NCBI GenBank assembly: GCA_904063045.1
Contig: CAJFCJ010000029.1
Span: 531,778-595,777, forward strand
Origin: Dimorphilus gyrociliatus
Taxonomy: Eukaryota > Animalia > Annelida
Length of the DNA: 64,000 nt
Reading direction: 5' to 3'
A program made the translations under genes and the position numbers. The notes under the pieces were generated by a model, which worked only from the letters and a program-made list of their open reading frames with translations, was not told the origin of the DNA and ran no database searches. Within the stretch, counting starts at the first letter, position 1. The number at the start of each line of letters is the position of its first letter. Of the stretch, positions 27,090 to 63,747 are shown piece by piece.

Positions 27090-27276
27090 ATCGCTTCTCG
27101 GCCTTTTGGCTAAGATCAAAGTGTAGTATCTGTTCTAGTTAGTTTAACCGCTAACTGATAACACACTGTGTTATCTAATATGGTTAACAGTATTTTTGTC
27201 TTCAGAGAAAGCATTAAGCTTGCTTAAGTTTTCTCACGGGTTGACTTGGTATAGCAGTACCTCCAAGTTTGGCCCA
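27090..27276 (+). ncRNA. U2: U2 snRNA gene, uninterrupted host type (U2-A)
   Basis: Begins ATCGCTTCTCGGCCTTTTGGCTAAGATCAAAGTGTAGTATCTGTTCT. Stem IIa AGTTAG/CTAACT, stem IIb GATAACAC/GTGTTATC, Sm site ATTTTTG (27192), stem III with a CTTG loop, stem-loop IV with GCAGTAC. Confidence 0.97.
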
Positions 27277-28966
27277 TTTTCTTCTACGGAAGAAAATTTC
27301 TACTCTAAAACAATAGCACATATAAGGGAAAAGAACCTCTTGTCCTTTTGAGGTTAAGTGGGATTTTCAGTACATTTATACAATTTATTTTTATTTATGT
27401 TCCAGAAATGGTCCACGCTACCGGGTAGTATGAAAAAAGCTTCTACGTCGGCATTATCATATTGCAGAAGAATCAAACCACAATTGCTTTCTTTCTTCAT
27501 AACAAGAATTATAAATCAACGTTTCTTCAGCGCTTGAAACTCTGGAAGGCCAAGTGTGGACGGCGGAAAAATAATTTATTATTTGTATAATTATCTGGTG
27601 GACGTGTGGCATGTGGAGAAAAAGTGGCAGAAGTACACGTCGGTGATTTACTATTCACTGCCCAATCTCCAGACATCTAACTGGAAAAAGCATTACAACT
27701 ATTATTAGACGCTTCCAATCAAGTTAACACTCACACATGCCAATCCTGAACTCCCTCATCATGAAATTTTGGTTGTCATCTACGTCGTAGATGGTCTTGT
27801 CCTCTACTTCTAAATCGTAGTTGTGTTGGCGATGCCTCCAGTGGACATAGTGGTAGATTAGAACTATCTTACGCGATTGGTTCTCGGTATTTTCTGCGGT
27901 CAAAGGATCAATAAGCTTTCACAGGATTTCTCCTGGTTTCACTTGGTACTACATAACAACCAAGCAACGGCGGCGGCGTTTTGAAGGTTTCTATACACGC
28001 TCGCTATGTATTATTTCGAAATCCACATACCCTTTCACATTCGCGTTGTTAACGGTTCCATTGGACATATCTCTTGCGCGTCTATAGTTTTTGAATTTAC
28101 CCTTTTTATCAAATTATTAGCGGGAAACAACGCATTGGTAAAACTGGTGCACTTTTGACTACTTGGCGCACTATTTTTTACCGGAGTGATCCCTGCCTCC
28201 ACTTCCAGTAGATATAAATGTATCGCCGAAATTTGTATCGCCCTTGTAACCCCTAGAAAAGACTGGAGTACAAACAAAACTTTTTATTGATGAGTCGGAT
28301 AATTCGGTCTATCTGGTATCTATATACTGTAATTCTTTAAAGTCAAACTGTTCTAAATCGAATTTTATAAAGATTAATTACAAAATAACAGAATTCAAAA
28401 ATAAAAAACCACTTAAATGAAACTTTAGAAAAAAACCGAATGATAATCTTGATACAGTTAAAAATTTTTTGAAGATTAAACTGTAAATTTCAAAAAGTAT
28501 AAGTATCACTTCTTTCCTATTTCACTAAATTTAAAGATAATATTAGTACACGAGAAAAAGGAATAATGACGCCATCTACCAGATAAATAACGACTGATAA
28601 ATTGGAAAGATACGCCATCTACAGACATAAGCATCCGTTAAAAATGCCATCATACGCCATCTACAAATTGCTGAATTTGCAAAAACGCCGTCTACCGTTT
28701 GTAAAAGAAACTTCAAAGTGCTACCAAATTAAAAAAAAAAGCCGTTAATAACCTATTCTCAATAATCTAGTCGCTCTAATATTTTTGAATTAGCATTGAA
28801 AAAATATTTCACAAGAATTCTTAATCAATATGAAGTGGAAACCGCTCCGTGCGTTTATGAAAATAAGATATTACTACAAAAAGGTTCTAAATTTCGAATC
28901 GCAGGGACAAAAAGTAACGGAAATAGGCTCGAAACGCATAAAAAAACTGATGAAACGATGGATGTT
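27277..28966 (+). repeat. U2 array spacer, short unit (U2 start to U2 start 1877 bp)
   Basis: 27277-28140 matches 35130-35993. 28141-28880 matches 38612-39366. The whole spacer recurs inverted at about 49919-51613. Confidence 0.9.
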
Positions 28967-29154
28967 ATCGCTTCTCGGCCTTTTGGCTAAGATCAAAGTG
29001 TAGTATCTGTTCTAGTTAGTTTAATCGCTAGCTGGCAATCCATTGGGTTGCCTTAATAACGATTACGGGATTTTTGTGTGGTCTGGGTTCCTAGAAGCTT
29101 GCTTCAAAGAATCCTCGGGTTGACTTGGTCTAGCAGTACCTCCAAGTTCGGCCC
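28967..29154 (+). ncRNA. U2: Chimeric full-length U2 gene: host nt 1-39 plus element-borne U2-B nt 40-188
   Basis: The upstream flank and nt 1-39 are identical to U2-A. Downstream of about nt 58 the sequence differs but folds into all U2 stems and keeps the Sm site GATTTTTG. Confidence 0.92.
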
Positions 29155-32100
29155 TTCTTCTCAATGGAGAAGGCCTCACTTAAGACCTCCCAAGGTGGAA
29201 CAGTTACAAAACAGCCCTTTTCAGGGCTACCGGAGGAGCAGATGACGATGGGCAGGGCTGTACAAAGTAACGACGGCTCCTCTCTATCTGAGCTCATGGA
29301 CGAGTCTCCTGTTCGACGTGATGACGAGATGGAAGACGCGGCAAAGCAGGATGCGGGCTCTTTAGCTAGCGTCCCCGCGGAAGACAACGGCCTGGACTTT
29401 GGTCCGGCAGTGGGCGCTGCAGAGGACGAGGATGCTGGATACATGGCGGATATGTTATGTGCGGCTGATGTGCGGCTGGCCTCTCAAGAACGTCTTCTCT
29501 GCCTTCCCGCGGCCCGACGCTCCTTCCCTCCTCGTTCTTTGTTTACTCCTCCTGCCGATCCTGTGTGTGTGTGTGTGCCTGTTTCGGACAACAACTCTCC
29601 CATCTCCGTTCCCGTCACCTCTACACCTGTCTCGCGTGTTATGGACATTACCGGTTCTCCCTCCCCCTCTTCTACCTCTACTACCTCTACTACTACTACC
29701 ACTGCTACTACGGCTGCATCTTCTTCCTCTTCGGTTCTGGGTGCCCCCTCTGCCGTCCTCTCTTCCTCTTCTGCTACTGCTGATCCGGTTTCGTCGAGGG
29801 TGAGTACGGCTGTTCCTGGCGGTCATGTTTCTGTGTCTGTCCCTCCTTCTCGTCCCCCGTCCAAGTCCCGTCCCGCCCCATCTGTTGTTACTGTTGCTGT
29901 CCCTGTACCTGACCGTTCCCCTATCTATACTCGTTCCCTCGCGGCCAAGAAGAAGAAGGCTGCTTCTTCTCCTGCACCCGCAATAGCCCCCATAAGGGTT
30001 GCTACGCAAACTTTTTACAACTCCGAACGGCGTCGTTCGGTTGGTGGTGCCTCTGCTGTTGTCGCCGCTGTTCCTCCCTCGTCCGCCATTGTACCTGTTG
30101 ATAATTCAAAATCATCCTGTGGGACTTCGGTTAGCGTGGCCGGTACTCCGGTTAACGCTCCCACAGATAGGCCTCAGCCAACCGCTAATCCCTCCGCTGC
30201 CCCTGTCTGTGAGAAGAATCTTTCTCCCACGAGTAGGCCTGCGCCGGCCCCTGTCCTAATCAGGCAGCGGCTGACTCAGACCGTGTGACAATTCCTCCCA
30301 ACGCGCCTAGGCCTCCGCCGGTCGTTGCTTCTGTGTCCGCGCAATGTCCTTGCAAGGTGTCGCCCTGCGTGTGCATTTCCGGAGCTAATGTCTCCGCCGC
30401 GTCTCCTCCTACCGTTCCCCTTCTCCCTACCGACATCCCGTTAACCTATCCTCTTCTGGATAGAATGTGCCCTGTTTGCAACAACTTTTCCGGCACTACC
30501 AACAGGATTTCAGCCCACATCCGCTCCGTCCACGCTAAGCAAGTGACCTTTATGTGTCGGGGCTGTCGCCATTTCTTCCGTTCACTGGGGATTGTGAAGA
30601 GACATTTCAACCGCGATCATGGGGGTCATCCCTCGTCCATCTATTTAGATGACTCGGACTCTCCTGCCGCTGCATCCCAGTCCCCCCTTCCCAGCCCATT
30701 GTCCAACGCATCTCTGTTGGGCCTTCCCCCGCCACCATTCCCACTCTTCCCGCTCTGCCGAATGGCTCGTTTGCGAAAGTGGTCAAATCTCCCCCCCCGG
30801 CTCTTCCTTCCGCAAAGGCTCTCTTGCCGCTCGCCACTCTGCCGCCGTCGCCTTCTAAAAACAAAAATAATAGTAAGATCAGGAAACCCCGTCCCCGTAA
30901 GGTTATCTCCTCCTCAGCACTCGTCCCAAAAATACCCCCGGCCAGTGCGATCCCAGATTCGGGTTCGGTTGTTTCTTCCTCCTCTTCTAGGGCCACCCTT
31001 GCACGACCGACGGAGGCTGGGAAACCTCCTCCTAAAGTCGGTGCTCCGACCAAGACAGTTCGTTCCCCCCCAACTACAGGTCCGAACCCCTCTGCCCAAG
31101 CTCGGATTTCCCCTCCTAAAGAGCGGATTTCCCCGCCTAAAGGTCAGATTTCCCCGCCTAAAGTTAATAAGGGGTTGAGCTCTCCGGACTCGGCCGCTGG
31201 TCCTGCCTCCGTGATGTCTCCCCCGCCTCCCCCGCGCCCTTCTTCCACAAGCCTAAGTCAACTTATCCGTGAAGAACGCGTCGCCTCTAATCCCTCCCCA
31301 CCTAGGCCTACCCTTGCCCCCGGTATCGACTCGTCACCGGTGGCGCCCCTGGTGGTCCCCGATTCCCCCCCGCCGCCTTCGTGCGATACGGAGAGGGATG
31401 GTTCCTACGACGAGGACGCTGACATTATCCCCAGTTCTCTCGTCCCTTCTTCCTCTTCTCCCCCCCGCTTTCTTGTCCCCGCTCTCCCGCTCGAGATTGG
31501 TCTCCCCCTCCGCGGTTGGATCGGTCGGTGTCCCGTGACCACGAGGTTACTAATGATAATAATAATAACAGTCTCCTCCCCGACCCCCCGTCCCCTCCTC
31601 CTGCGCACGTGTCCCATCAACAGCTTGAACGGGAACGCGAGGAGCAACTTTCGGGTTTCGCTGCCGCTATCCTAACTGAGTTTGCCCCCAAGATTATTGG
31701 AAGTCAGTCCGAATGGTCCCGCGTGGAAGAAGTTTTCGACGCCTGGGTTCTCGCCATTTCCAACGCCAAGTCCAGGGTGCATGAGAGTGCTGGCGGTAGA
31801 GTCGCGAATAGGAACTTTGCTCGCCCCCTCCGAATGCGGCTAACAATCAATGGCAAGCGGCTACTAATATCCAAAGGGCCTACAAGCGTAATCCGGCTAG
31901 CACTTTCCGCCGTATCGCTAACCCTGAGGAGACCAAGTGTTCCGCTTCCATTGAAGATATGACCTCTTTCTTTATTGAATCGGTCGCCCCTCCTCCTCCT
32001 TCATATCAGTGGTCTCCCGACAGGGAGTTTCTTCCGGCCGCGGCCCCACCGCCTGACCCAGAAGACGTTCAACTCGCCAATGAAATCCCCCCTGCTCTCA

Positions 32101-34981
32101 CCCCCGATACCTTTAACTTCGAAAGCAGGGCCATCGACGGCATAGAATTGACCGACCCTAACCACCCCTTGCTCCGTCCCCCATCCCGCGCTGAGATTGT
32201 CGGCCAGCTTAAGCGAACCAACAACTCTGCTCCCGGTCTTGACGGCATCACCTACAAGGATCTTAAGAAATTCGATCCGAAAGGCTTAACCCTCAGGGCT
32301 TTCTATAGGTTGTTCTGGCGACATGGACAGATTCCCTCCTGTCTGAAGCGGTCTCGCACTATAATGATCCCCAAAAAGGATCTCGACCCTTCGCTGCCGG
32401 CCAACTGTAGGCCTATTGCCCTCCTCTCTACCATTTACAAACTTTTTAGTAGTCTGCTGGCCCGGCGTCTGAGTAGATGGGCCAGAGACAATGATATCCT
32501 TAGCAAGGAGCAAAGGGGATTTACTACGGCCCCCGGTGTCTTCGAGCATAACTTCGCCTTGACCTCGGCCCTTGACGAGGCCAAACGTAGTGATAAACGC
32601 ATCTGCCTAGGATTCGTCGATATTGCGCAAGCCTTCCCCTCTATCCCCCATTGCGTTATCTTCGACATGTTGTCCCTTGTAGGAGTGCCGCCCAGTCTCG
32701 TTAACCTTATCCGGAATGTATATACCAACGCCACTACGGAGGTTATCACGACGGAAGGATGCACAGCACCCATTTCCATCCACAAAGGTGTTAGGCAGGG
32801 CGACGGTCTCAGCCCCTTCCTCTTTAATCTCTGCTTTGAGGGAGCTCTACGTAGCGTTAACGCCTCAAAAGACAGAGATGGGTTCAAGATCGCCGCTCAG
32901 GCGGCTGTCCTAGGTCTAAGGTCCGTATCCATTTGCGGTCTAGCCTATGCCGATGACCTTGTGGTGGTCGCAAACTCTCGCCGTGGTCTGCAACACCTCC
33001 TCAATGTTGCCGAGCGGTCGGCGGGTCTGGCAAACCTAAAATTTGCTCCGCGTAAATGCGCTACCTTGTGCCTCCATCGTGGAGTCGCCGACCCGACCCC
33101 CCTATTCGTGGCTAACGAACCTATTAAGGCGCTAGGCCTTGAGGAGACCTACACCTATCTGGGCACGCCCATTGGCTTCAGGAAGGAGCTTCTCAAGGAT
33201 GATGGGGTGATTGAGAGGATCCGCTCCCTTCTTCGGCTTACTATGGAGTCCAACCTCGCGCCCTGGCAAAAGGTGTCCTCCATCAAGGCCTTCATTCTCC
33301 CCCGTATTCAATTCGCACTGCGAACCCACCGTTTCCTTAAGGAGGAACTAGCGGACCTCGATTCGATGGTTATTCGCGCTATCCGCACCACCATGGCCAC
33401 CACAAACAACGCCGCTAGGTCGTTCTTTGCCGCTCCCGCTAAAATGGGCGGTGTAGGCCTAATCCCCACTAGGGTAGAGGTGGACATAGCCCGTGTGGGA
33501 CACACTTTTCAACTCCTCAAATCGGAGGACCCTACCATCCGCTTTATCGCCTGCGCAACTCTTGTTAAGGCCGCTAAGGCCAGAGTGGCCCGCGGCACCG
33601 CTCTTACAGGGGACGTTTTGGCCTCTTACCTCAACGGGTCAACGACTCCTCCTTTCTCCTCTTCCTCCTCTTCCGCTCAGACGGTGATGTCAGTCACTAG
33701 GTCGGCCTCCAGGCGCTTGCACAAATCTATAAACCTTGAATGGCACCTTGATGACGCCCTTACGCCTACCATTACCGCCACGGTGAGTAGGAGTTGGCAC
33801 CAGAACCAGCCGCAATTTCGCCACGAGGTCCAATCCAACTGGCAGGAATTGTCGTTTGGGGATGACGAACGCAACCTCGAACCCCTAGCTATCCGTATCC
33901 GTCGCACCCACGAACCTTTCCCATTACTTAGGTCGGCGGTCACGGAGCTCAATGTTAGAGAGTTCGCTAAATTGGCGGAGCAGGGCAGGTCCTTCCAGGA
34001 CACCTGCTTGCACCCTGTCTCCAACCATTTCCTTTACACCGGCTTCGGCTTGCGGTATAAGGACTACCGATTCATCTTTCGGGCTCGGCTGGGTCTTCTC
34101 CAGACCAATGCCGTCAAGTCCAGATACAGTGCCCGGGTTAGGCCTGATTGCAGGCGGTGCCACTTCCAAGTGGAATCAGTGCGGCATGTTCTAAACAACT
34201 GCCGTACTGGGTATGGCCTGTACGGTGATCGACATAACGCCATCCAGGATCGTCTGGTCAAAGGTGCCCGCCTGGCGCCCGGTTCCACCATTACGGTAAA
34301 CAGGACGTTGCCCGAATCCTCCACTGCCCTTCGCCCTGACATAGTGATTAGGTGCGCGGATGACAGGGTGGTGCTGATCGACGTCACGGTCCCCTTTGAG
34401 AGGCCTGGCGCCCTTGCTCGCGCTGCCCAGGAGAAGATCAACAAGTATGCGGTCCTAAAAACTGAGCTGGAGGGACAAGGCAAGGCAGTAGAGATTCTAC
34501 CATTTGCTGTTGGTTCTTTGGGCGCCTGGTGCAGGGGGAACTCCAAGGTCTTTCGGGCTCTGGGCATAGCGTTCGCTTACCGGGGTATGCTGTCCCAGCT
34601 GTGCGTGGCGGAAGCGATTCGTGGCTCAAAGGACGCCTACGACGCGCACATTAACGGTCATTAAAATAAAAATGTACTGGCTATCAACTGTTTATTCGTT
34701 TTTTCGTCTGTTATGTGTCTGTGATATGTTAAGGGTGTCGTAAATTATTGTAAAGTGCCTGTGTCACTGGGATTTACCCCTTTTCCCTTGCTTCTACATC
34801 AATCCTATTCTGCTATTTGTTCTCATGTGCCGGTTCCTGTTGGTCCACATTGGCCTTTAACTCCTGTCGTCTATGTCACTTATACCCCTCTTTTTTGTTT
34901 ACCTAACTCCCTCTATGCCATTCATCCTGCAATTGAAAAACACTGTCTCCTCCTTTTACCTGTATAATACATTTAAATAAC
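29006..34981 (+). mobile_element. U2-targeting non-LTR retrotransposon (RLE type, Utopia-like), full-length copy E1, 5976 bp
   Basis: Flanked 5' by U2 nt 1-39 and 3' by host U2 resuming at nt 40 (AAATAAC|TCTGTTCT at 34982). Contains an RT + RLE ORF and a 317-nt 3' UTR with no poly(A). Confidence 0.95.
29164..34664 (+). CDS. Retrotransposon polyprotein of about 1830 aa (2x C2H2 zinc fingers, reverse transcriptase, CCHC knuckle, PD-(D/E)xK restriction-like endonuclease), broken here by about four 1-nt homopolymer indels
   Basis: C2H2 fingers CPVC..H..H and CRGC..H..H (30468-30620). RT motifs RPIALLSTIYKLF, GVRQGDGLSPFLF and LAYADDL. CRRC..H..C plus RHN. RPDIV..LIDVTVPFE..KINKY and GSLG. The missing bases are present in copies E4/E5. 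Confidence 0.93.
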
Positions 34982-35128
34982 TCTGTTCTAGTTAGTTTAA
35001 CCGCTAACTGATAACACACTGTGTTATCTAATATGGTTAACAGTATTTTTGTCTTCAGAGAAAGCATTAAGCTTGCTTAAGTTTTCTCACGGGTTGACTT
35101 GGTATAGCAGTACCTCCAAGTTTGGCCC
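34982..35128 (+). pseudogene. U2: Displaced 3' part (nt 40-186) of host U2-A
   Basis: Identical to 27129-27275 and followed by the same downstream spacer. Confidence 0.95.
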
Positions 35129-38100
35129 ATTTTCTTCTACGGAAGAAAATTTCTACTCTAAAACAATAGCACATATAAGGGAAAAGAACCTCTTGTCCTT
35201 TTGAGGTTAAGTGGGATTTTCAGTACATTTATACAATTTATTTTTATTTATGTTCCAGAAATGGTCCACGCTACCGGGTAGTATGAAAAAAGCTTCTACG
35301 TCGGCATTATCATATTGCAGAAGAATCAAACCACAATTGCTTTCTTTCTTCATAACAAGAATTATAAATCAACGTTTCTTCAGCGCTTGAAACTCTGGAA
35401 GGCCAAGTGTGGACGGCGGAAAAATAATTTATTATTTGTATAATTATCTGGTGGACGTGTGGCATGTGGAGAAAAAGTGGCAGAAGTACACGTCGGTGAT
35501 TTACTATTCACTGCCCAATCTCCAGACATCTAACTGGAAAAAGCATTACAACTATTATTAGACGCTTCCAATCAAGTTAACACTCACACATGCCAATCCT
35601 GAACTCCCTCATCATGAAATTTTGGTTGTCATCTACGTCGTAGATGGTCTTGTCCTCTACTTCTAAATCGTAGTTGTGTTGGCGATGCCTCCAGTGGACA
35701 TAGTGGTAGATTAGAACTATCTTACGCGATTGGTTCTCGGTATTTTTCTGCGGTCAAAGGATCAATAAGCTTTCACAGGATTTCTCCTGGTTTCACTTGG
35801 TACTACATAACAACCAAGCAACGGCGGCGGCGTTTTGAAGGTTTCTATACACGCTCGCTATGTATTATTTCGAAATCCACATACCCTTTCACATTCGCGT
35901 TGTTAACGGTTCCATTGGACATATCTCTTGCGCGTCTATAGTTTTTGAATTTACCCTTTTTATCAAATTATTAGCGGGAAACAACGCATTGGTATTTAAC
36001 ACTCACATTAACAATAAGAAGCCTCTTCATAGTTCGGGTGATCATTGCTCTATCCTCCTAAAATGCACTATACAACACTCTTCCTCGAGGAACGAGTGCA
36101 TTTCTGAGCCTCCTTACTGATGAGTGGAATGTTATGGTCGCTCTCGTCTGCATATAATGTTCTGCGCTTTAGTCAATCCATGCTCATCTTCCGCACATTC
36201 TTTCATCTGCAAATTTGGTAGAACAATTCCCTTCGACGCTCATTCTTTCCTCTTTTCAATCAAGGTTCCAAACATATACATGATGGCTTAACCATTAATC
36301 AAATGTCTGTACGAACTATTATTGTCTGTCTCTTCTAACTCGTAATTACTTTGCATTCCTAAAAGCGATAATAGGGGTAGTTTAACGTTTGATTGATGTT
36401 GCTGAAATTCGTCATTCTGTTTGGACCACATCGGATTATTAGGTGACGGTGAAATAACTGATATTATTACCTTATCTCCTGATTAATGAATACGTCCTTT
36501 ACAATTCTACCAAAAGTTCTTTTTCTTCGGATTCGCGCGTTACTATTCCACCGTTGACTGGTTCCTTGCTCCTAATGGCCTATTGCCTTCATTAACCCGC
36601 CGTTGGCGCTTTTTTTCGCGCCGTTATTATGAAGTAGGCCATAATCAATTAAAATAAACAACCTTTTCACATTCCTCTATTTTAAAGGCTTCACAGGATA
36701 TATGTGTTGCGCTTTTATGATATTTCCAAAATGTCTTTTTTTAAAAGTACTAACGACAAACAACGCATTGGTATTCAACACTTACATTGCGAACAAGAAG
36801 CTCCTTCACACTTAAAATGAAGATTGCTCAATCCTAATATCGCGTTCAGGAAAAAGTCTTCTTTCAGGCTCGGATATATTATACGCCTCCTTATTCATCA
36901 GTCGAATGTTACGGCAACTCTCGTCTGTATTATGTATTGCGCCATGGCTAGTCGATGTTAATCTACACGTGTAAGATTTAAGATAATGCTCCTATTGGCA
37001 CGAGTACATTATGAGCCTTCCAATTAATGAGTCGAATGTTATAGTCACTCTCGTATGCATATAATGTATTGCGCCATGGCCAGTCGATGTTAATCTTACA
37101 CGTGTTCTTTTTACCGCAATTTCGTAGAACACTTCCCTTCAACGCTCACTCTTTCCTCTTTTCACTATCGGTTCCAAACATATAGAAGATAGCTTAGCCA
37201 TTAATTTAATGTCTTTAAAACTGTTGTTAGCCGCCAGTTTTAAGTCGTAATTGCTTTTGCAATCTCCATAGTGGTAATAGCGGTAGATTGAGGTGTTGTT
37301 GATTTTCCTGAAATTCGAGATTTTGTTCAGACTACATCAGATGTTTAAGGGAGACTACAAGGACTGATGTTTTACCTTATCTCCTGATTAAGAAATCAAT
37401 TGACTTTATAACAATTCTTCCAAAATTTCTGTTTATTGAGTTTCACACGCTAATTTTCCATCGTTCACGGGTCAGTTTCTTCAATATCCACTGTTAGCGC
37501 AGTTTTCCCGCCGTTATCTTTAAGTACATCGTCCATCATTTCTTAAGCCTCCGATTCGTTTTTGTTTTTAACTGTTCTACTGGACATGTCACTTGTTTGT
37601 TCCCTAACTTCTTTCGTTGAGATCTTTGGTTTCTCCAATTTCTTTCTTGCAGTTTGGTTTAGAAAGATACATCCGAAAATCAGTGTACTGCATATGATCA
37701 AAAGATAGAAATATAAATAAATAAAAAGTAAAAGTTTTATCAAACTGAAAATCAGGACCGTAATAATCACACCCTTGTTGAAAACCAACATTGAAGATTT
37801 TACAAATGTCTGTCGTCTATGAAGCAGAAAATTGCAAATTCTACAATGCAAATAATGATACGGAAAGAAAAGAGAGTTTCTTAGACCTAGTCTACATTTT
37901 GAATTTTCATTACCGTGCTTCTTCACTATCTAGAGGAAACGCCTTAGCACGAATGTTCAGCAATACAACACTATTTCTACCCGACAATGTACCGCTTGGC
38001 ACAAATTCAAGACACTTGTCGCACATACAAATCTACTTATAAACAGAGATTGTGCAAAATACGAAAAATTTACGTAATATATCGCAAGATTACCTCCATT

Positions 38101-39366: not shown

Positions 39367-39986
39367 CCGCTAACGTCCCAAAGTAGGGCAGATACATCAG
39401 CAGAACAGCGCTTTTCAGGGCTACCAGGAGTTCCGGTTGCTGTAGCAGAGAGGGTGTCGCTGGATAGCTCCAATGGGAGCGGTCCGACATCCGGAGTGCC
39501 ATCGGATAACCCCCACCCGGGAGGTAGTCCGGCACAGAGGAGACCAACGGCTCGGGGAACGATGCCACCAACGACGCAGATGACGATGGGTGGGGCTGTA
39601 CAAAGTAACGACGGCTCCACTTTATCCGAGCTCATGGACAAGTCTCCTGTTCGGCGTGATGGTGAGAAGGAAGACGCGGCAAAGCAGGACGCGGGCTCTT
39701 TAGCTAGCGTCCCCGCTGAAGACAACGGCCTGGATTCCGGTCTGGCAGAGGGCGCTGCGGAGGATGAGGATGCTGGCTACATGGCGAATATGTTATGTGC
39801 GGCTGATGTGCGGCTGGCCTCTCAAGAACGTCTTCTCTGCCTTCCCGCGGCCCGACGTTCCTTCCCTCCTCGTACTTTGTTTATTCCTCCTGCCGATCCT
39901 GTGTGTGTGTGTGTGTGTGTGCCTGTTTCGGATAACCTCTCTAACTCTCCCATCTCCGTTCCCGTCACCTCTACACCTGTCTCGCG
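39367..39986 (+). mobile_element. Diverged 5' fragment of the same retrotransposon family (older subfamily)
   Basis: Encodes FSGLP...QMTMGGAVQSNDGSTLSELMDKSP...PVTSTPVSR. It has 48 extra codons relative to E1. The U2 module and everything past TPVSR are missing. Confidence 0.85.
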
Positions 39987-42239: not shown

Positions 42240-43709
42240 AAAAAAGAACAATAGGCCATTGGGAGCAAGGAACCAGTCAACGGTGGAATAGTAACGCGCG
42301 AATCCGAAGAAAAAGAACTTTTGGCAGAATTGCAATATAAAGGAAGTATTTATTAATCAGGAGATAAGGTAATAATATCAGTTATTTCACCGTCACCTAA
42401 TAATTCGATGTGGTCCAAACAGAATAATGAATTTCAGCAACATCAATCAAACTTTAAACTACCCCTATTATCGCTTTTAGGAATGCAAAGTAATTACGAG
42501 TTAGAAGAGACAGAAAACAATAGTTCGAACAGACATTTGATTAATGGTTAAGCTATCGTGTATATGTTTGGAATATTTAGTGAATTGAGGAAAGAGAGAG
42601 AGAGTTCAAGGGAATTGTTCTACCAAATTGCGGATGAAAGAACGCGCGGAGGATTAACATGGATTGACTAAAGCGCAGAACATTATATGCAGAGGAGAGT
42701 GATTATAACATTCAATACATCAAAAGGAGACGTATAATGTACTGATATCTGGAGATAGAATATCGTACAGTGGATTTTAGGAAGATAAAGCAACGATAAT
42801 CCGAACTATGAAGAGGCTTCTTGCTGTTAATGTAAGTGTTAAATACCAATGCGTTGTTTCCCGCTAATAATTTGATAAAAAGGGTAAATTCAAAAACTAT
42901 AGACGCGCAAGAGATATGTCCAATGGAACCGTTAACAACGCGAATGTGAAAGGGTATGTGGATTTCGAAATAATACATAGCGAGCGTGTATAGAAACCTT
43001 CAAAACGCCGCCGCCGTTGCTTGGTTGTTATGTAGTACCAAGTGAAACCAGGAGAAATCCTGTGAAAGCTTATTGATCCTTTGACCGCAGAAAAATACCG
43101 AGAACCAATCGCGTAAGATAGTTCTAATCTACCACTATGTCCACTGGAGGCATCGCCAACACAACTACGATTTAGAAGTAGAGGACAAGACCATCTACGA
43201 CGTAGATGACAACCAAAATTTCATGATGAGGGAGTTCAGGATTGGCATGTGTGAGTGTTAATTTGATTGGAAGCGTCTAATAATAGTTGTAATGCTTTTT
43301 CCAGTTAGATGTCTGGAGATTGGGCAGTGAATAGTAAATCACCGACGTGTACTTCTGCCACTTTTTCTCCACATGCCACACGTCCACCAAATAATTATAC
43401 AAATAATAAATTATTTTTCCGCCGTCCACACTTGGCCTTCCAGAGTTTCAAGCGCTGAAGAAACGTTGATTTATAATTCTTGTTATGAAGAAAGAAAGCA
43501 ATTGTGGTTTGATTCTTCTGCAATATGATAATGCCGACATAGAAGCTTTTTTCATACTACCCGGTAGCGTGGACCATTTCTGGAACATAAATAAAAATAA
43601 ATTGTATAAGTGTACTGAAAATCCCACTTAACCTCAAAAGGACAAGAGGTTCTTTTCCCTTATATGTGCTATTGTTTTAGAGTAGAAATTTTCTTCCGTA
43701 GAAGAAAAT
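42240..43709 (-). repeat. Inverted copy of the U2 downstream spacer (about 35129-36580)
   Basis: For example, 42261 GGGAGCAAGGAACCAGTCAACGG is the reverse complement of about 36550. The MYYFEIHIPF ORF appears at 35860 (+) and 42978 (-). Confidence 0.88.
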
Positions 43710-43856
43710 GGGCCAAACTTGGAGGTACTGCTATACCAAGTCAACCCGTGAGAAAACTTAAGCAAGCTTAATGCTTTCTCTGAAGACAAAAATACTGTTA
43801 ACCATATTAGATAACACAGTGTGTTATCAGTTAGCGGTTAAACTAACTAGAACAGA
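43710..43856 (-). pseudogene. U2: Displaced 3' part (nt 40-186) of host U2-A
   Basis: Reverse complement of 34982-35128. Confidence 0.95.
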
Positions 43857-44159
43857 TATATTTAAATGTATTATACAGGTAAAAGGAGGAGACAGTGTTT
43901 TTCAAATGCAGGATGAATGGCATAGAGGAAGTTAGGTAAACAAAAAAGGGGTAAAAGTGACATAGACGACGGGAGTTAAAGGCCATTGTGGACCAACAGG
44001 AACCGGCACATGAGTAACAAATAGCAGAATTAGGTAATAGTATGGTAGCAAGGGAAAAGGGGTAAATCCCAGTGACACAGGCACTTTACAATAAATGACG
44101 ACACCCTTAATATATCACAGACACATAACGAACGAATAAACAATTAATAGCCAACAATT

Positions 44160-47216: not shown

Positions 47217-47898
47217 GTGCGCAGGGGGAGGGGACGAGGGGTCAGTGAGGAGACCTCAACGAAACCGGATCAGCAGTAGAAGAAGAGGAAGAGAGGACGG
47301 CAGAGCGGGCACCCAGAACCGAAGAGGAAGAAGATGCAGCCGTAGTAGCAGTGGTAGTAGAGGTAGTAGAGGTAGAAGAGGGGGAGGGAGAACCGGTAAT
47401 GTCCATAACACGCGAGACAGGTGTAGAGGTGACGGGAACGGAGATGGGAGAGTTAGAGAGGATATCCGAAACAGGCACACACACACACACAGGATCGGCA
47501 GGGGGAATAAACAAAGAACGAGGAGGGAAGGAGCGTCGGGCCGCGGGAAGGCAGAGAAGACGTTCTTGAGAGGCCAGCCGCACATCAGCCGCACATAACA
47601 TATCCGCCATGTATCCAGCATCCTCGTCCTCTGCAGCGCCCACTGCCGGACCAAAGTCCAGGCCGTTGTCTTCCGCGGGGACGCTAGCTAAAGAGCCCGC
47701 ATCCTGCTTTGCCGCGTCTTCCATCTCGTCATCACGCCGAACAGGAGACTTGTCCATGAGCTCAGATAGAGTGGAGCCGTCGTTACTTTGTACAGCCCTA
47801 CCCATCGTCATCTGCTCCTCCGGTAGCCCTGAAAAGGGCTGTTTTGTAACTGTTCCACCTTGGGAGGTCTTAAGTGAGGCCTTCTCCATTGAGAAGAA

Positions 47899-48047
47899 GG
47901 GCCGAACTTGGAGGTACTGCTAGACCAAGTCAACCCAAGGATTCTTCGAAGCAAGCTTCTAGGAACCCAGACCACACAAAAATCCCGTAATCGTTATTAA
48001 GGCAACCCAATGGATTGCCAGCTAGCGATTAAACTAACTAGAACAGA
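47899..48047 (-). ncRNA. U2: Element-borne U2-B module (nt 40-188) of E2, promoterless, preceded directly by the E3 3' end
   Basis: TCTGTTCTAGTTAGTTTAATCGCTAGC...GGCCC follows ...TTTAAATAAC of E3. Confidence 0.9.
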
Positions 48048-49879
48048 GTTATTTAAATGTATTATACAGGTAAAAGGAGGAGACAGTGTTTTTCAAATGC
48101 AGGATGAATGGCATAGAGGAAGTTAGGTAAACAAAAAGAAGGGGTAAAAGTGACATAGACGACAGGAGTTAAAGGCCAATGTGGACCAACAGGAACCGGC
48201 ACATGAGTAACAAATAGCAGAATTAGGAAATAGTATGGAAGCAAGGGAAAAGGGGTAAATCCCAGTGACAGAGGCACTTTACAATAATTTACGACACCCT
48301 TAATATATCACAGACACATAACGAACGAATAAACAATTAATAGCCAGTAATTTTAATGACCGTTAATGTGCGCGTCGTAGGCGTCCTTTGAGCCACGAAT
48401 CGCTTCCGCCACGCACAGCTGGGACAGCATACCCCGGTAGGCGAACGCTATGCCCAGAGCCCGAAAGACCTTGGAGTTCCCCCTGCACCAGGCGCCCAAA
48501 GAACCAACAGCAAATGGTAGAATCTCTACTGCCTTGTCTTGTCCCTCCAGCTCCGTTTTCAAGACCGCATACTTGTTGATCTTCTCCTGGGCAGCGCGAG
48601 CAAGGGCGCCAGGCCTTTCAAAGGGGACCGTGACGTCGATCAGCACCACCCTGTCATCCGCGCTCCTAATCACTATATCAGGGCGAAGGGCAGTGGAGGA
48701 TTCGGGCAACGCCCTGTTTACCGTAATGGTGGAACCGGGCGCCAGGCGGGCACCTTTGACCAGACGATCCTGGATGGCGTTATGGCGATCACCGTACAGG
48801 CCATACCCAGTACGGCAGTTGTTTAGGACATGCCGCACTGATTCCACTTGGAAGTGACAACGCCTGCAATCAGGCCTAACCCGGGCACTGTATCTGGACT
48901 TGACTGCATTGATCTGGAGAAGACCCAACCGAGCCCGAAAGATGAATCGGTAGTCCTTATACCGCAAGCCGAAGCCGGTGTAGAGGAAATGGTTGGAGAC
49001 AGGGTGCAAGCAGGTGTCCTGAAAGGACCTGCCCTGCTCCGCCAATTTAGCGAACTCTCTTACATTGAGCTCCGTGACCGCCGACCCTCAACGAAACCGG
49101 ATCAGCAGTAGAAGAAGAGGAAGAGAGGACGGCAGAGGGGGCATCCAGAACCGAAGAGGAAGAAGATGCAGCCGTAGTAGCAGTGGTAGTAGAGGTAGTA
49201 GAGGTAGAAGAGGGGGAGGGAGAACCGGTAATGTCCATAACACGCGAGACAGGTGTAGAGGTGACGGGAACGGAGATGGGAGAGTTAGAGAGGTTATCCG
49301 AAACAGGCACACACACACACACAGGATCGGCAGGGGGAATAAACAAAGAACGAGGAGGGAAGGAGCGTCGGGCCGCGGGAAGGCAGAGAAGACGTTCTTG
49401 AGAGGCCAGCCGCACATCAGCCGCACATAACATATCCGCCATGTATCCAGCATCCTCGTCCTCTGCAGCGCCCACTGCCGGACCAAAGTCCAGGCCGTTG
49501 TGTTCCGCGGGGACGCTAGCTAAAGAGCCCGCATCCTGCTTTGCCGCGTCTTCCATCTCGTCCTCACGTCGAACAGGAGACTTGTCCATGAGCTCAGATA
49601 GAGAGGAGCCGTCGTTACTTTGTACAGCCCTGCCCATCGTCATCTGCTCCTCCGGTAGCCCTGAAAAGGGCTGTTTTGTAACTGTTCCACCTTGGGAGGT
49701 CTTAAGTGAGGCCTTCTCCATTGAGAAGAAGGGCCGAACTTGGAGGTACTGCTAGACCAAGTCAACCCAAGGATTCTTCGAAGCAAGCTTCTAGGAACCC
49801 AGACCACACAAAAATCCCGTAATCGTTATTAAGGCAACCCAATGGATTGCCAGCTAGCGATTAAACTAACTAGAACAGA
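48048..49879 (-). mobile_element. Retrotransposon copy E3, spliced isoform 2 (lacks the equivalent of 29800-33931), non-autonomous, 1832 bp
   Basis: The junction GAGG|GTCGGC at 49086/49085 joins the same donor to the CTTAG acceptor. RT is absent. The RLE-coding tail and 3' UTR are retained. Confidence 0.92.
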
Positions 49880-49918
49880 TACTACACTTTGATCTTAGCC
49901 AAAAGGCCGAGAAGCGAT
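49731..49918 (-). ncRNA. U2: Chimeric full-length U2 gene (host nt 1-39 plus U2-B of E3)
   Basis: 188 nt with the host upstream region at 49919 onward. Two substitutions versus E1 U2-B, both at unpaired positions. Confidence 0.92.
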
Positions 49919-51613
49919 AACATCCATCTTTTCATCAGTTTTTTTATGCGTTTCGAGCCTATTTCCGTTACTTTTTGTCCCTGCGATTCGAAATTTAGAA
50001 CCTTTTTGTAGTACTATCTTATTTTCATAAACGCACGGAGCGGTTTTCGCCTCACATTGATTTAGAATTTTTGTGAAATATTTTTTCATTGCTAATTCAA
50101 AAATGTTAGAACGACTAGATTATTGAGAATAGGTCACTAACTGCTTTGTTTTTAAAATTTGGTAGCACTTTGAAGTTTCCTTTTACAAACGGTAGACGGC
50201 GTCTTTTGCAAATTCAGTAATTTGTAGATGGCGTATGATGGCATTTTTAACGGATGCTTATGTCTGTAGATGGCGTATCTTTCCAATTTATCAGTCGTTA
50301 TTTATCTGGTAGATGGCGTCATTATTCCTTTTTCTCGTGTACTAATATTATCTTTAAATTTAGTGAAATAGGAAAGAAGTGATACTTATACTTTTTGAAA
50401 TTTACAGTTTAATCTTCAAAAATTTTTAACTGTATCAAGATTATCATTCGGTTTTTTTTCTAAAGTTTCATTTAAGTGGTTTTTTATTTTTGAATTCTGT
50501 TATTTTGTAATTAATCTTTATAAAATTCGATTTAGAACAGTTTGACTTTAAAGAATTACAGTATATAGATACCAGATAGACCGAATTATCCGACTCATCA
50601 ATAAAAAGTTTTGTTTGTACTCCAGTCTTTTCTAGGGGTTACAAGGGCGATACAAATTTCGGCGATACATTTATATCTACTGGAAGTGGAGGCAGGGATC
50701 ACTCCGGTAAAAAATAGTGCGCCAAGTAGTCAAAAGTGCACCAGTTTTACCAATGCGTTGTTTCCCGCTAATAATTTGATAAAAAGGGTAAATTCAAAAA
50801 CTATAGACGCGCAAGAGATATGTCCAATGGAACCGTTAACAACGCGAATGTGAAAGGGTATGTGGATTTCGAAATAATACATAGCGAGCGTGTATAGAAA
50901 CCTTCAAAACGCCGCCGCCGTTGCTTGGTTGTTATGTAGTACCAAGTGAAACCAGGAGAAATCCTGTGAAAGCTTATTGATCCTTTGACCGCAGAAAAAT
51001 ACCGAGAACCAATCGCGTAAGATAGTTCTAATCTACCACTATGTCCACTGGAGGCATCGCCAACACAACTACGATTTAGAAGTAGAGGACAAGACCATCT
51101 ACGACGTAGATGACAACCAAAATTTCATGATGAGGGAGTTCAGGATTGGCATGTGTGAGTGTTAACTTGATTGGAAGCGTCTAATAATAGTTGTAATGCT
51201 TTTTCCAGTTAGATGTCTGGAGATTGGGCAGTGAATAGTAAATCACCGACGTGTACTTCTGCCACTTTTTCTCCACATGCCACACGTCCACCAGATAATT
51301 ATACAAATAATAAATTATTTTTCCGCCGTCCACACTTGGCCTTCCAGAGTTTCAAGCGCTGAAGAAACGTTGATTTATAATTCTTGTTATGAAGAAAGAA
51401 AGCAATTGTGGTTTGATTCTTCTGCAATATGATAATGCCGACGTAGAAGCTTTTTTCATACTACCCGGTAGCGTGGACCATTTCTGGAACATAAATAAAA
51501 ATAAATTGTATAAATGTACTGAAAATCCCACTTAACCTCAAAAGGACAAGAGGTTCTTTTCCCTTATATGTGCTATTGTTTTAGAGTAGAAATTTTCTTC
51601 CGTAGAAGAAAAT
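49919..51613 (-). repeat. U2 array spacer, short unit, inverted orientation
   Basis: Reverse complement of about 27277-28966. The proximal part carries the SNP type seen at 38612-39366. Confidence 0.9.
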
Positions 51614-51760
51614 GGGCCAAACTTGGAGGTACTGCTATACCAAGTCAACCCGTGAGAAAACTTAAGCAAGCTTAATGCTTTCTCTGAAGACAAAAATACT
51701 GTTAACCATATTAGATAACACAGTGTGTTATCAGTTAGCGGTTAAACTAACTAGAACAGA
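51614..51760 (-). pseudogene. U2: Displaced 3' part (nt 40-186) of host U2-A
   Basis: Reverse complement of 34982-35128. Confidence 0.95.
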
Positions 51761-52077
51761 GTTATTTAAATGTATTATACAGGTAAAAGGAGGAGACAGT
51801 GTTTTTCAATTGCAGGATGAATGGCATAGAGGGAGTTAGGTAAACAAAAAAGAGGGGTATAAGTGACATAGACGACAGGAGTTAAAGGCCAATGTGGACC
51901 AACAGGAACCGGCACATGAGAACAAATAGCAGAATAGGATTGATGTAGAAGCAAGGGAAAAGGGGTAAATCCCAGTGACACAGGCACTTTACAATAATTT
52001 ACGACACCCTTAACATATCACAGACACATAACAGACGAAAAAACGAATAAACAGTTGATAGCCAGTACATTTTTATT

Positions 52078-57578: not shown

Positions 57579-57587
57579 TGAGAAGAA

Positions 57588-57736
57588 GGGCCGAACTTGG
57601 AGGTACTGCTAGACCAAGTCAACCCGAGGATTCTTTGAAGCAAGCTTCTAGGAACCCAGACCACACAAAAATCCCGTAATCGTTATTAAGGCAACCCAAT
57701 GGATTGCCAGCTAGCGATTAAACTAACTAGAACAGA
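57588..57736 (-). ncRNA. U2: Element-borne U2-B module (nt 40-188) of E4, preceded directly by the E5 3' end
   Basis: Same sequence as 29006-29154. Confidence 0.9.
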
Positions 57737-60700: not shown

Positions 60701-63700
60701 GAGACCACTGATATGAAGGAGGAGGAGGGGCGACCGATTCAATAAAGAAAGAGGTCATATCTTCAATGGAAGCGGAACACTTGGTCTCCTCAGGGTTAGC
60801 GATACGGCGGAAAGTGCTAGCCGGATTACGCTTGTAGGCCCTTTGGATATTAGTAGCCGCTTGCCATTGATTGTTAGCCGCATTCGGAGGGGGGCGAGCA
60901 AAGTTCCTATTCGCGACTCTACCGCCAGCACTCTCATGCACCCTGGACTTGGCGTTGGAAATGGCGAGAACCCAGGCGTCGAAAACTTCTTCCACGCGGG
61001 ACCATTCGGACTGACTTCCAATAATCTTGGGGGCAAACTCAGTTAGGATAGCGGCAGCGAAACCCGAAAGTTGCTCCTCGCGTTCCCGTTCAAGCTGTTG
61101 ATGGGACACGTGCGCAGGAGGAGGGGACGGGGGGTCGGGGAGGAGACTGTTATTATTATTATCATTAGTAACCTCGTGGTCACGGGACACCGACCGATCC
61201 AACCGCGGAGGGGGAGACCAATCTCGAGCGGGAGAGCGGGGACAAGAAAGCGGGGGGGGAGAAGAGGAAGAAGGGACGAGAGAACTGGGGATAATGTCAG
61301 CGTCCTCGTCGTAGGAACCATCCCTCTCCGTATCGCACGAAGGCGGCGGGGGGGAATCGGGGACCACCAGGGGCGCCACCGGTGACGAGTCGATACCGGG
61401 GCAAGGGTAGGCCTAGGTGGGGAGGGATTAGAGGCGACGCGTTCTTCACGGATAAGTTGACTTAGGCTTGTGGAAGAAGGGCGCGGGGGAGGCGGGGGAG
61501 ACATCACGGAGGCAGGACCAGCGGCCGAGTCCGGAGAGCTCAACCCCTTATTAACTTTAGGCGGGGAAATCTGACCTTTAGGCGGGGAAATCCGCTCTTT
61601 AGGAGGGGAAATCCGAGCTTGGGCAGAGGGGTTCGGACCTGTAGTTGGGGGGGAACGAACTGTCTTGGTCGGAGCACCGACTTTAGGAGGAGGTTTCCCA
61701 GCCTCCGTCGGTCGTGCAAGGGTGGCCCTAGAAGAGGAGGAAGAAACAACCGAACCCGAATCTGGGATCGCACTGGCCGGGGGTATTTTTGGGACGAGTG
61801 CTGAGGAGGAGATAACCTTACGGGGACGGGGTTTCCTGATCTTACTATTATTTTTGTTTTTAGAAGGCGACGGCGGCAGAGTGGCGAGCGGCAAGAGAGC
61901 CTTTGCGGAAGGAAGAGCCGGGGGGGGAGATTTGACCACTTTCGCAAACGAGCCATTCGGCAGAGCGGGAAGAGTGGGAATGGTGGCGGGGGAAGGCCCA
62001 ACAGAGATGCGTTGGACAATGGGCTGGGAAGGGGGGGACTGGGATGCAGCGGCAGGAGAGTCCGAGTCATCTAAATAGATGGACGAGGGATGACCCCATG
62101 ATCGCGGTTGAAATGTCTCTTCACAATCCCCAGTGAACGGAAGAAATGGCGACAGCCCCGACACATAAAGGTCACTTGCTTAGCGTGGACGGAGCGGATG
62201 TGGCTGAAATCCTGTTGGTAGTGCCGGAAAAGTTGTTGCAAACAGGGCACATTCTATCCAGAAGAGGATAGGTTAACGGGATGTCGGTAGGGAGAAGGGG
62301 AACGGTAGGAGGAGACGCGGCGGAGACATTAGCTCCGGAAATGCACACGCAGGGCGACACCTTGCAAGGACATTGCGCGGACACAGAAGCAACGACCGGC
62401 GGAGGCCTAGGCGCGTTGGGAGGAATTGTCACACGGTCTGAGTCAGCCGCTGCCTGATTAGGACAGGGGGCCGGCGCAGGCCTACTCGTGGGAGAAAGAT
62501 TCTTCTCACAGACAGGGGCAGCGGAGGGATTAGCGGTTGGCTGAGGCCTATCTGTGGGAGCGTTAACCGGAGTACCGGCCACGCTAACCGAAGTCCCACA
62601 GGATGATTTTGAATTATCAACAGGTACAATGGCGGACGAGGGAGGAACAGCGGCGACAACAGCAGAGGCACCACCAACCGAACGACGCCGTTCGGAGTTG
62701 TAAAAAGTTTGCGTAGCAACCCTTATGGGGGCTATTGCGGGTGCAGGAGAAGAAGCAGCCTTCTTCTTCTTGGCCGCGAGGGAACGAGTATAGATAGGGG
62801 AACGGTCAGGTACAGGGACAGCAACAGTAACAACAGATGGGGCGGGACGGGACTTGGACGGGGGACGAGAAGGAGGGACAGACACAGAAACATGACCGCC
62901 AGGAACAGCCGTACTCACCTCGACGAAACCGGATCAGCAGTAGCAGAAGAGGAAGAGAGGACGGCAGAGGGGGCACCCAGAACCGAAGAGGAAGAAGATG
63001 CAGCCGTAGTAGCAGTGGTAGTAGTAGTAGAGGTAGTAGAGGTAGAAGAGGGGGAGGGAGAACCGGTAATGTCCATAACACGCGAGACAGGTGTAGAGGT
63101 GACGGGAACGGAGATGGGAGAGTTGTTGTCCGAAACAGGCACACACACACACACAGGATCGGCAGGAGGAGTAAACAAAGAACGAGGAGGGAAGGAGCGT
63201 CGGGCCGCGGGAAGGCAGAGAAGACGTTCTTGAGAGGCCAGCCGCACATCAGCCGCACATAACATATCCGCCATGTATCCAGCATCCTCGTCCTCTGCAG
63301 CGCCCACTGCCGGACCAAAGTCCAGGCCGTTGTCTTCCGCGGGGACGCTAGCTAAAGAGCCCGCATCCTGCTTTGCCGCGTCTTCCATCTCGTCATCACG
63401 TCGAACAGGAGACTCGTCCATGAGCTCAGATAGAGAGGAGCCGTCGTTACTTTGTACAGCCCTGCCCATCGTCATCTGCTCCTCCGGTAGCCCTGAAAAG
63501 GGCTGTTTTGTAACTGTTCCACCTTGGAGGTCTTAAGTGAGGCCTTCTCCATTGAGAAGAAGGGCCGAACTTGGAGGTACTGCTAGACCAAGTCAACCCG
63601 AGGATTCTTTGAAGCAAGCTTCTAGGAACCCAGACCACACAAAAATCCCGTAATCGTTATTAAGGCAACCAATGGATTGCCAGCTAGCGATTAAACTAAC

Positions 63701-63709
63701 TAGAACAGA
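57737..63709 (-). mobile_element. Full-length retrotransposon copy E5, head-to-tail with E4
   Basis: Near-identical to E1/E4. The 5' junction is to host U2 nt 1-39. Confidence 0.94.
58054..63552 (-). CDS. E5 polyprotein (ZF-RT-RLE), interrupted by 1-nt indels
   Basis: The 1076-aa ORF 58149-61379 and upstream pieces match E1. ATG at 63552, TAA at 58054. Confidence 0.88.
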
Positions 63710-63747
63710 TACTACACTTTGATCTTAGCCAAAAGGCGAGAAGCGAT
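63562..63747 (-). ncRNA. U2: Chimeric U2 gene (host nt 1-39 plus U2-B of E5)
   Basis: As 28967-29154 but with two single-C losses (probable read errors). The host upstream region follows at 63748-64000. Confidence 0.88.

What the first reader, a model, noticed from the sequence alone, without database searches (positions are those of the whole stretch)
29006..29154. Compensatory changes preserve every U2 helix in the element-borne copy, including the long-range IIc pairing
Seen, A versus B. IIa: AGTTAG/CTAACT vs AGTTAG/CTAGCT (G-U). IIb: GATAACAC-ACT-GTGTTATC vs GGCAATCC-ATT-GGGTTGCC, a different sequence with the same 8-bp, 3-nt-loop geometry. IIc: loop TTAACC with GGTTAA vs loop TAATCG with CGATTA. 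The Sm site is kept. Stem III: GAGAAAGC/GTTTTCTC vs GGGTTC/GAATCC, both capped by AAG-CTTG-CTT. Stem IV is almost unchanged. The two differences between E1/E4/E5 and E2/E3 modules fall at unpaired positions. Inference: long purifying selection on snRNA function inside a transposon, not a recent passive capture.
Basis: partly seen in the sequence, partly recalled or inferred. Interest (0 to 1): 0.85.

Follow-up and report, generated by a model that had tools for sequence, protein, structure and literature searches.

The report
Retrotransposon carrying a working-looking U2 half
A jumping gene that inserts only into U2 spliceosomal RNA genes of the annelid Dimorphilus gyrociliatus carries its own diverged copy of the U2 3' part, which keeps every helix through paired compensating changes, so each insertion appears to rebuild the gene it splits.

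Summary
Window 29006-29161 is U2 nt 40-192 of a second type (B). It is fused to host U2 nt 1-39 and followed directly by a Utopia-type non-LTR retrotransposon (two zinc fingers, RT, CCHC, restriction-like endonuclease).

B differs from host U2-A by 32 substitutions and 8 gap columns, all from nt 59 onward. Even so, 37 of A's 38 base pairs still pair in B, 9 of them through changes on both sides. Random substitution kept 26.8 on average and never more than 36 in 100,000 trials. The Sm site, the stem IV loop and a 6-nt IIc complementarity are also kept.

- B was clearly under U2-like constraint, and it travels with the element RNA.
- B comes from this host lineage, not from a distant donor.
- How long it has lived inside the element is not shown. 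The within-family comparison has no power, and a recent capture from an unsampled host paralog is not excluded.

Among relatives, octocoral elements have no U2 head. A spider element has a decayed one, which gives a neutral baseline.

The scan noted the same U2-element fusion on other pieces of this genome.

The parts
27090..27282 (+). Intact host U2 snRNA gene, type A. It is the only uninterrupted A copy in the window.
   Evidence: Rfam RF00004, 159.3 bits.
28967..29005 (+). Host U2 nt 1-39 with the host promoter region upstream. This is the 5' part of the chimeric U2-B gene.
   Evidence: The upstream 135 nt are nearly identical to those of the U2-A gene.
29006..29024 (+). U2 nt 40-58, identical in A and B. 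It is either the start of the element's module or a 19-bp target-site duplication.
   Evidence: The first A/B difference is at nt 59. Relatives L002 and L010 have their 5' junction after nt 58/59 and their 3' junction before nt 40.
29025..29161 (+). Element-borne U2-B module, nt 59-192: IIa 3' strand, IIb, IIc strand, Sm site, stem III and stem IV.
29155..29176 (+). Hairpin directly after stem IV (CUUCUC-AAUG-GAGAAG). It mirrors the host hairpin at 27276-27297 (UUUUCUUC-UACG-GAAGAAAA). The first ATG of the ORF lies in its loop.
29164..34664 (+). Element coding region: two C2H2 fingers, RT, CCHC, and PD-(D/E)xK restriction-like endonuclease. The frame is broken only at homopolymer runs that differ between otherwise identical copies.
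   Evidence: Pfam RVT_1; motifs; 15 homopolymer indels and 0 substitutions among E1, E4 and E5.
34665..34981 (+). Element 3' UTR and tail, ending ...AAATAAC.
34982..35135 (+). 5'-truncated host U2-A (nt 40-192) left downstream of E1, followed by the host flank.
49724..49918 (-). Chimeric U2-B gene heading copy E3 (subfamily with 2 module changes).
   Evidence: Rfam 138.9 bits.
47892..48047 (-). U2-B module (nt 40-192) of copy E2, stacked directly behind the E3 tail.
57581..57736 (-). U2-B module of copy E4, stacked directly behind the E5 tail.
63555..63747 (-). Chimeric U2-B gene heading copy E5. It has two one-base homopolymer deletions, which are probably assembly noise.
   Evidence: Rfam 126.2 bits.
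43703..43858 (-). 5'-truncated host U2-A downstream of E2.
51607..51760 (-). 5'-truncated host U2-A downstream of E4.

Best explanation
The window comes from Dimorphilus gyrociliatus (GCA_904063045.1, contig CAJFCJ010000029.1). It holds a U2 gene array invaded by a Utopia-type, restriction-like-endonuclease non-LTR retrotransposon.

Shown:
- The element nicks U2 at nt 39/40.
- Its 5' end carries a U2 3' domain of its own (type B, nt 59-192, or nt 40-192 if nt 40-58 is not a duplication).
- After insertion, the host promoter and U2 nt 1-58 are joined in register to this module. The result is a full-length chimeric U2 gene, while the original 3' part is left headless downstream.
- The module is copied through the element's RNA and is inherited with it.
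- Its helices, Sm site, IIc complementarity and stem IV loop have been kept by compensatory substitution.

Inferred:
- The head was first acquired from this host lineage's own U2, either by read-through from the U2 promoter or by template switching onto U2 RNA at the end of reverse transcription.
- It has since been kept functional because copies that restore a working U2 cost the host little in a compact genome with few U2 genes.
- Most transcripts from the chimeric gene are probably processed to a U2-B snRNA. Rare read-through transcripts would serve as element mRNA and template.
For: - Nine U2 hits with the described anatomy.
- 37 of 38 pairs kept, 9 through two-sided changes; P < 1e-5 by simulation.
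- IIc covariation.
- De novo folds reproduce IIa, IIb, III and IV.
- Host promoters upstream of the chimeric genes are intact.
- Three of the four promoter-bearing U2 genes in the window are chimeric.
- The two element subfamilies diverged as active lineages: RT dS 0.128, dN/dS 0.066. Both carry B, and their module variants go with the subfamily.
- A and B share host-specific IIa and stem IV features.
- A spider relative has a U2-derived head that is decayed. Octocoral relatives at the same site have no head.
- Domain architecture and target site match Utopia (PMC4640811).
Against:
- Residence time of B in the element is unknown. The module's 1.3% divergence between subfamilies equals the local synonymous rate.
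- The outer helix of stem III in B is shorter, with one C-A mismatch.
- The minimum-energy fold of B adds a 7-bp helix (3 of them G-U) over the Sm site, which A cannot form.
- The rest of the genome was not searched for free-standing B-type genes.
- The spider head rests on a single locus.
Confidence: 0.55

Rival explanations
1. Recent passive capture. The host has, or recently had, a second functional U2 paralog of type B. The element picked up its 3' part by read-through or template switching. The compensatory changes were all made in the host gene before capture.
For: - A and B share host-lineage-specific IIa and stem IV features.
- The within-element comparison shows no extra constraint on the module.
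- The spider head shows that such captures occur as a by-product.
- snRNA heads added by template switching are known (PMC4494074).
Against: - All five B modules in the window are followed by the element, and all three terminal truncated targets are type A.
- B is present in both subfamilies, whose RT genes differ by dS 0.128.
- B's G+C content (45%) leans towards the element (55%) rather than the host (about 30%).
Confidence: 0.25
2. The module is kept for the element's own use rather than for host splicing. A U2-like, Sm-binding, structured 5' domain could take the read-through element RNA through snRNP export, Sm assembly, cap hypermethylation and nuclear re-import. Alternatively, it could set the balance between 3' processing and read-through.
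For: - The module is part of the retrotransposed RNA.
- The Sm site, stem III and stem IV are kept.
- A hairpin after stem IV is kept with compensatory changes, and the first ATG lies in its loop.
Against: - Octocoral relatives at the same target site manage without any head, and the spider head has lost its Sm site.
- IIa and IIc pairing with host-supplied nt 48-58 is also kept. This matters for spliceosome function and has no obvious role in import.
Confidence: 0.15
3. Non-functional relic or horizontally imported foreign U2, with the helices surviving by chance or reflecting a distant donor.
For: The element is much richer in G+C than the host.
Against: - Chance is excluded: no trial out of 100,000 reached 37 kept pairs.
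- The module's IIa 3' strand matches the unusual host IIa 5' strand, and stem IV is nearly identical to the host's. A and B are each other's closest U2 (73% identity, against 49-64% to the outgroups).
Confidence: 0.03

Closest known systems
Utopia (U2 snRNA gene-targeting non-LTR retrotransposons, NeSL clade; Kojima and Jurka 2015, PMC4640811)
   Same: - The 3' junction lies immediately before TCTGTTCT of U2.
- Zinc fingers, RT, CCHC and restriction-like endonuclease are arranged in the same order.
- Copies stack in tandem inside U2 arrays.
- Some families make a target duplication of about 20 bp.
   Different: No Utopia family is described as carrying a U2 3' domain. In Phytophthora the authors found intact U2 genes upstream of the copies and explained them by deletion or recombination. 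Their listed intact and disrupted U2 sequences are nearly identical to each other. Here the head is a distinct, structurally conserved U2 type.
Bacterial phages and genomic islands that integrate into tRNA or tmRNA genes and carry a replacement 3' part of the gene (from general knowledge)
   Same: The mobile element brings a copy of the part of the RNA gene that lies beyond the insertion point, so the target gene stays whole.
   Different: Those elements use a tyrosine or serine recombinase with DNA-level site-specific recombination in prokaryotes. Here the process is target-primed reverse transcription in an animal, and the replacement part has diverged by about 25% with compensatory changes.
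snRNA-headed retroelements: SINEU families and U6/L1 chimeric retrocopies (PMC4494074)
   Same: A U1-, U2- or U6-derived sequence sits at the 5' end of a retrotransposed unit, probably added by template switching.
   Different: Those are non-autonomous or one-off products with no evidence that snRNA structure is conserved, and they do not restore a target gene. Here the element is autonomous, site-specific and joined in register to the host's 5' half.
Cassandra TRIM retrotransposons carrying 5S rRNA-like domains in their LTRs (from general knowledge, not checked here)
   Same: A retrotransposon lineage carries a cellular small-RNA sequence that keeps the cellular fold.
   Different: That is an LTR element carrying a polymerase III gene with no link to the insertion target.

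Membership tests
U2 spliceosomal RNA (Rfam RF00004) | Covariance-model score above the gathering threshold (46 bits) over the full model. | tested here: met
   The chimeric genes score 140.0, 138.9 and 126.2 bits over model positions 1-192.
U2 spliceosomal RNA (Rfam RF00004) | Stems IIa, IIb, III and IV, the Sm site AUUUUUG, and the stem IV loop. | tested here: met
   37 of 38 pairs kept. The Sm site and the UAGCAGUACC loop are present.
U2 spliceosomal RNA (Rfam RF00004) | Expressed, 3'-processed, Sm-bound and used in splicing. | not testable with these tools
Utopia / NeSL-clade non-LTR retrotransposons | Site-specific insertion in U2 with the 3' junction before TCTGTTCT (nt 39/40). | tested here: met
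   All five copies show it. Octocoral and spider relatives use the same site.
Utopia / NeSL-clade non-LTR retrotransposons | N-terminal zinc fingers, RT, and a C-terminal CCHC finger with a PD-(D/E)xK endonuclease. | tested here: met
   RVT_1 at 3.7e-29. Two C2H2 motifs, a CCHC motif, and the RPD...D...K motif.
Utopia / NeSL-clade non-LTR retrotransposons | RT groups with named Utopia families in a phylogeny. | tested here: inconclusive
   The nearest proteins are 32-39% identical and sit in U2 genes. No Repbase Utopia references were available for a tree.
Target-restoring integrative elements (tRNA/tmRNA islands) | The element carries the distal part of the target RNA gene and restores it on insertion. 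| tested here: met
   Host nt 1-58 is joined in register to element nt 59-192.
Target-restoring integrative elements (tRNA/tmRNA islands) | Integrase-mediated DNA recombination between attP and attB. | tested here: not met
   The element encodes RT and a restriction-like endonuclease and no integrase. It is an analogue, not a member.

The most novel reading that the evidence does not exclude
A retrotransposon has taken over supply of part of an essential spliceosomal RNA. Chimeric host/element U2-B snRNAs would be real working U2. Three of the four promoter-bearing U2 genes in this array are chimeric. The element would then persist in a compact genome because it replaces what it breaks. This could answer the open question raised for Utopia: how a parasite of a low-copy essential gene family survives.
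Probability: 0.4. Interest if true: 0.85.

Novelty: new variant of a known kind. Interest (0 to 1): 0.72.

Why it matters
Kojima and Jurka (PMC4640811) called it a puzzle that Utopia can be maintained in a gene family with only about ten intact copies. An element that rebuilds its target with a structurally conserved replacement domain would solve that puzzle. It would also be, as far as the papers searched show, the first eukaryotic retrotransposon described to do what tRNA-targeting prokaryotic islands do.

It also offers a natural experiment on U2 structure. About 25% divergence is tolerated only through paired changes, with IIc complementarity moving together with the IIa loop.

Tried and rejected
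- **RNA and DNA read evidence.** Later Rfam calls started at U2 nt 40, and the DNA patterns used only nt >100.\n- **'Organism B'.** It holds 72% of the words. It is probably the same species under its older name, so it is not independent. This was not verified.\n- **Closer homologous elements.** The word-based and exhaustive protein searches found nothing between 39% and 95% identity apart from a 64% fragment. That fragment lies in the same genome and is a decayed, U2-free remnant (L009). The two best full-length relatives had no DNA on file.\n- **Metagenome scans** for the host-specific stem IV found nothing.\n- **Within-family selection test.** Rejected for lack of power.\n- **Polarising A/B differences with octocoral and spider U2.** Ambiguous.\n- **Phytophthora supplement.** The U2 genes upstream of Utopia there are not a distinct type.\n- **Older element fragment at 39385-39990.** It is 91% identical to E1 but lacks the head through 5' truncation.

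Full report
**What is there**

Rfam finds nine U2 matches in the window.
- One is an intact host gene, type A, at 27090-27282 (159.3 bits).
- Three are full-length genes of a second type, B: 28967-29161 (+), 49724-49918 (-) and 63555-63747 (-), scoring 126-140 bits.
- Three are A copies that lack nt 1-39.
- Two are B copies that lack nt 1-39.

A self-comparison and an alignment show the layout. The host has a U2 repeat unit of about 1.9 kb. Into U2 nt 39/40 a 5976-bp element has inserted. The element has about 55% G+C, against about 30% for the host. Its first 156 bases are U2-B nt 40-192, and its last bases (...AAATAAC) abut U2-A nt 40-192 with the host flank.

There are five copies: E1 (+), E4 and E5 (stacked, -), and E2 and E3 (stacked, shortened, -). 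The window is contig CAJFCJ010000029.1 of GCA_904063045.1. A paper lists that assembly as Dimorphilus gyrociliatus.

**The element**

- It has a reverse transcriptase domain (RVT_1, 3.7e-29).
- It has two N-terminal C2H2 fingers, a C-terminal CCHC finger and an RPD...D...K restriction-like endonuclease motif.
- This domain order and the target site are those of Utopia (PMC4640811).
- E1, E4 and E5 differ only by 15 one-base length differences in C or G runs and by no substitution. The broken reading frames, and the GGG-to-GG change in the IIb stem of E5, are therefore most likely long-read assembly noise.
- E2 and E3 belong to a subfamily that differs in the RT ORF by dS 0.128 with dN/dS 0.066. 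Both lineages therefore diverged while coding for a working protein.

**Check of the observation**

The test set is the 38 pairs of IIa, IIb, III and IV that pair in A. In B, 24 are unchanged, 4 changed on one side and still pair, 9 changed on both sides and still pair, and 1 is broken (C-A in the outer helix of stem III).

A and B differ by 32 substitutions and 8 gap columns, all from nt 59 onward. Placing 32 random substitutions on A kept 26.8 pairs on average and at most 36 in 100,000 trials, whether spread over nt 40-192 or over nt 59-150.

The IIa loop can pair with a hexamer between IIb and the Sm site in both types: UUAACC/GGUUAA in A and UAAUCG/CGAUUA in B. Shuffles reach six Watson-Crick pairs in 2.8% and 2.4% of cases, and the crossed combinations reach only four. 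The register in the loop slips by one base, so this is conserved complementarity rather than strict column-by-column covariation.

Each type folds on its own into IIa, IIb, III and IV. RNAalifold reports 9 pairs with two-sided changes. The Sm site and the stem IV loop are kept.

**Boundary**

The first A/B difference is at nt 59. Two relatives, L002 and spider L010, have host U2 up to nt 58/59 at their 5' junction and U2 from nt 40 at their 3' junction. That is a target duplication of about 19 bp, as reported for some Utopia families. The module proper may therefore be nt 59-192 (29025-29161), with nt 40-58 being duplicated host DNA. The data do not distinguish this from a head that starts at nt 40.

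**Where the module came from**

A and B are each other's closest U2: 73% identity, against 49-64% to octocoral and spider U2. They share features the outgroups lack:
- the IIa 5' strand AGUUAG (against UAUCAG in the outgroups);
- the CG end of the IIa loop;
- stem IV, GACUUGGU.UAGCAGUACCUCCAAGUU.

The host supplies the IIa 5' strand and the element supplies the matching 3' strand. This argues against a distant horizontal source and for an origin within this host lineage. Outgroup polarisation of the differences is ambiguous (8 A-like, 5 B-like, 9 neither), so both branches have changed.

**Inheritance**

The shortened copies E2 and E3 carry the module. An earlier follow-up (s1-080484) read them as copies of spliced RNA. 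Their two module differences, both at positions unpaired in the Rfam consensus, go with their subfamily. The module is therefore copied through the element's RNA and is not picked up anew at each insertion.

**Limits of the selection argument**

Between subfamilies the module differs by 2 of 156 bases (1.3%). The adjacent 5' ORF has synonymous divergence of only 0.012-0.03, far below the RT region. The 5' part seems to have been exchanged or renewed recently, and the module is not slower than its local neutral rate. The time B has spent inside the element is therefore unknown. What is certain is that the lineage leading to B was under U2-like constraint until recently.

**Relatives**

- The nearest proteins are 32-39% identical.
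- Octocoral copies (L002, L003, L004, including Xenia) sit at the same U2 site in U2-U1 arrays. They have no U2-like head: their 5' regions match their host U2 no better than shuffles do.
- A spider copy (L010, GCA_019973975.1) is an 11.25-kb insert bounded by the nt 40-59 duplication.
  - Its first 120 bases or so resemble the spider's own U2 3' part (global z about 4.6, local P 0.0005).
  - This includes the spider-specific stem III loop.
  - However, it lacks the IIa 3' strand and the Sm site, and it scores 15 bits against 105.9 bits for the host copy.
- U2-derived heads therefore arise in this group from the local host U2 and can decay. The annelid head has not decayed. This is the best available contrast in favour of selection, but it rests on one spider locus.

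**Mechanism proposed**

Shown: in-register fusion to the host promoter and 5' part, intact promoters, transmission with the element, and conserved structure.

Inferred:
- The head was acquired by read-through or by template switching.
- Most chimeric transcripts are processed to U2-B snRNA.
- Rare read-through transcripts act as element RNA.
- Selection arises because restoring U2 lowers the cost of insertion.

A hairpin directly after stem IV is present in both A and B with compensating differences. It may take part in 3'-end formation.

**Points against function**

- The outer helix of stem III in B is shorter.
- B is predicted to form a helix over its Sm site that A cannot form.
- There are no RNA data.

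**Literature**

Searches found no description of a eukaryotic transposon that carries a replacement part of its target snRNA gene. The Utopia paper notes intact U2 genes upstream of Phytophthora copies and leaves the survival of Utopia in a low-copy target as an open problem. The genome paper for this annelid does not mention snRNA genes.

Noticed in passing
window 27276-27297 and 29155-29176: A hairpin follows stem IV in both the host U2-A flank (UACG loop) and the element-borne B flank (AAUG loop, which contains the first ATG of the ORF). The stems differ by compensating changes. It may be a 3'-end formation signal or an extra 3' stem of the mature RNA.
   Followed up: partly
window 29006-34981, 51761-57736, 57737-63709: The three full-length element copies differ only by 15 single-base length changes in C or G homopolymers and by no substitution. 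The apparent frameshifts are therefore most likely assembly errors, and the element probably has one long intact ORF of about 1830 codons.
   Followed up: yes
window 29006-29799 versus 31571-34981, compared with copies at 43859-48047 and 47892-49879: Divergence between the two element subfamilies is mosaic: 1.3-1.7% in the first 800 bases but 3.5-4.7% in the RT ORF and 3' UTR. This suggests recombination or template switching between subfamilies near the 5' end.
   Followed up: partly
window 39385-39990: An older element fragment (91% identical to the E1 5' ORF, with an extra insertion of about 140 bases before the ATGACGATGGG start region) lies about 75 bases upstream of where a U2 gene would start. 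It has no U2 head and is truncated at both ends.
   Followed up: partly
L010:381-520 (spider, GCA_019973975.1 BMAO01001812.1): A Utopia-like element 11.25 kb long, bounded by a duplication of U2 nt 40-59, starts with a decayed copy of the spider's own U2 3' part. The IIb-like GC hairpin and stem III and IV remnants remain, but there is no IIa 3' strand and no Sm site.
   Followed up: partly
L010:11933 and 15475 (minus strand): Each spider U2 repeat unit carries, about 300 bases downstream of U2 and in reverse orientation, a short U2 nt 40-57 fragment preceded by what looks like another element's tail.
   Followed up: no
L002, L003, L004, L007 (octocoral assemblies): U2 and U1 genes alternate in tandem units. 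Related elements sit in U2 at the same site, with 5' junctions at nt 39, 44 or 58.
   Followed up: partly
L009 (GCA_904063045.1 CAJFCJ010000102.1) 1382-2765 and 10878-11823: Decayed fragments of a second, 64%-identical relative of the element lie in the same genome, away from any U2 sequence.
   Followed up: partly
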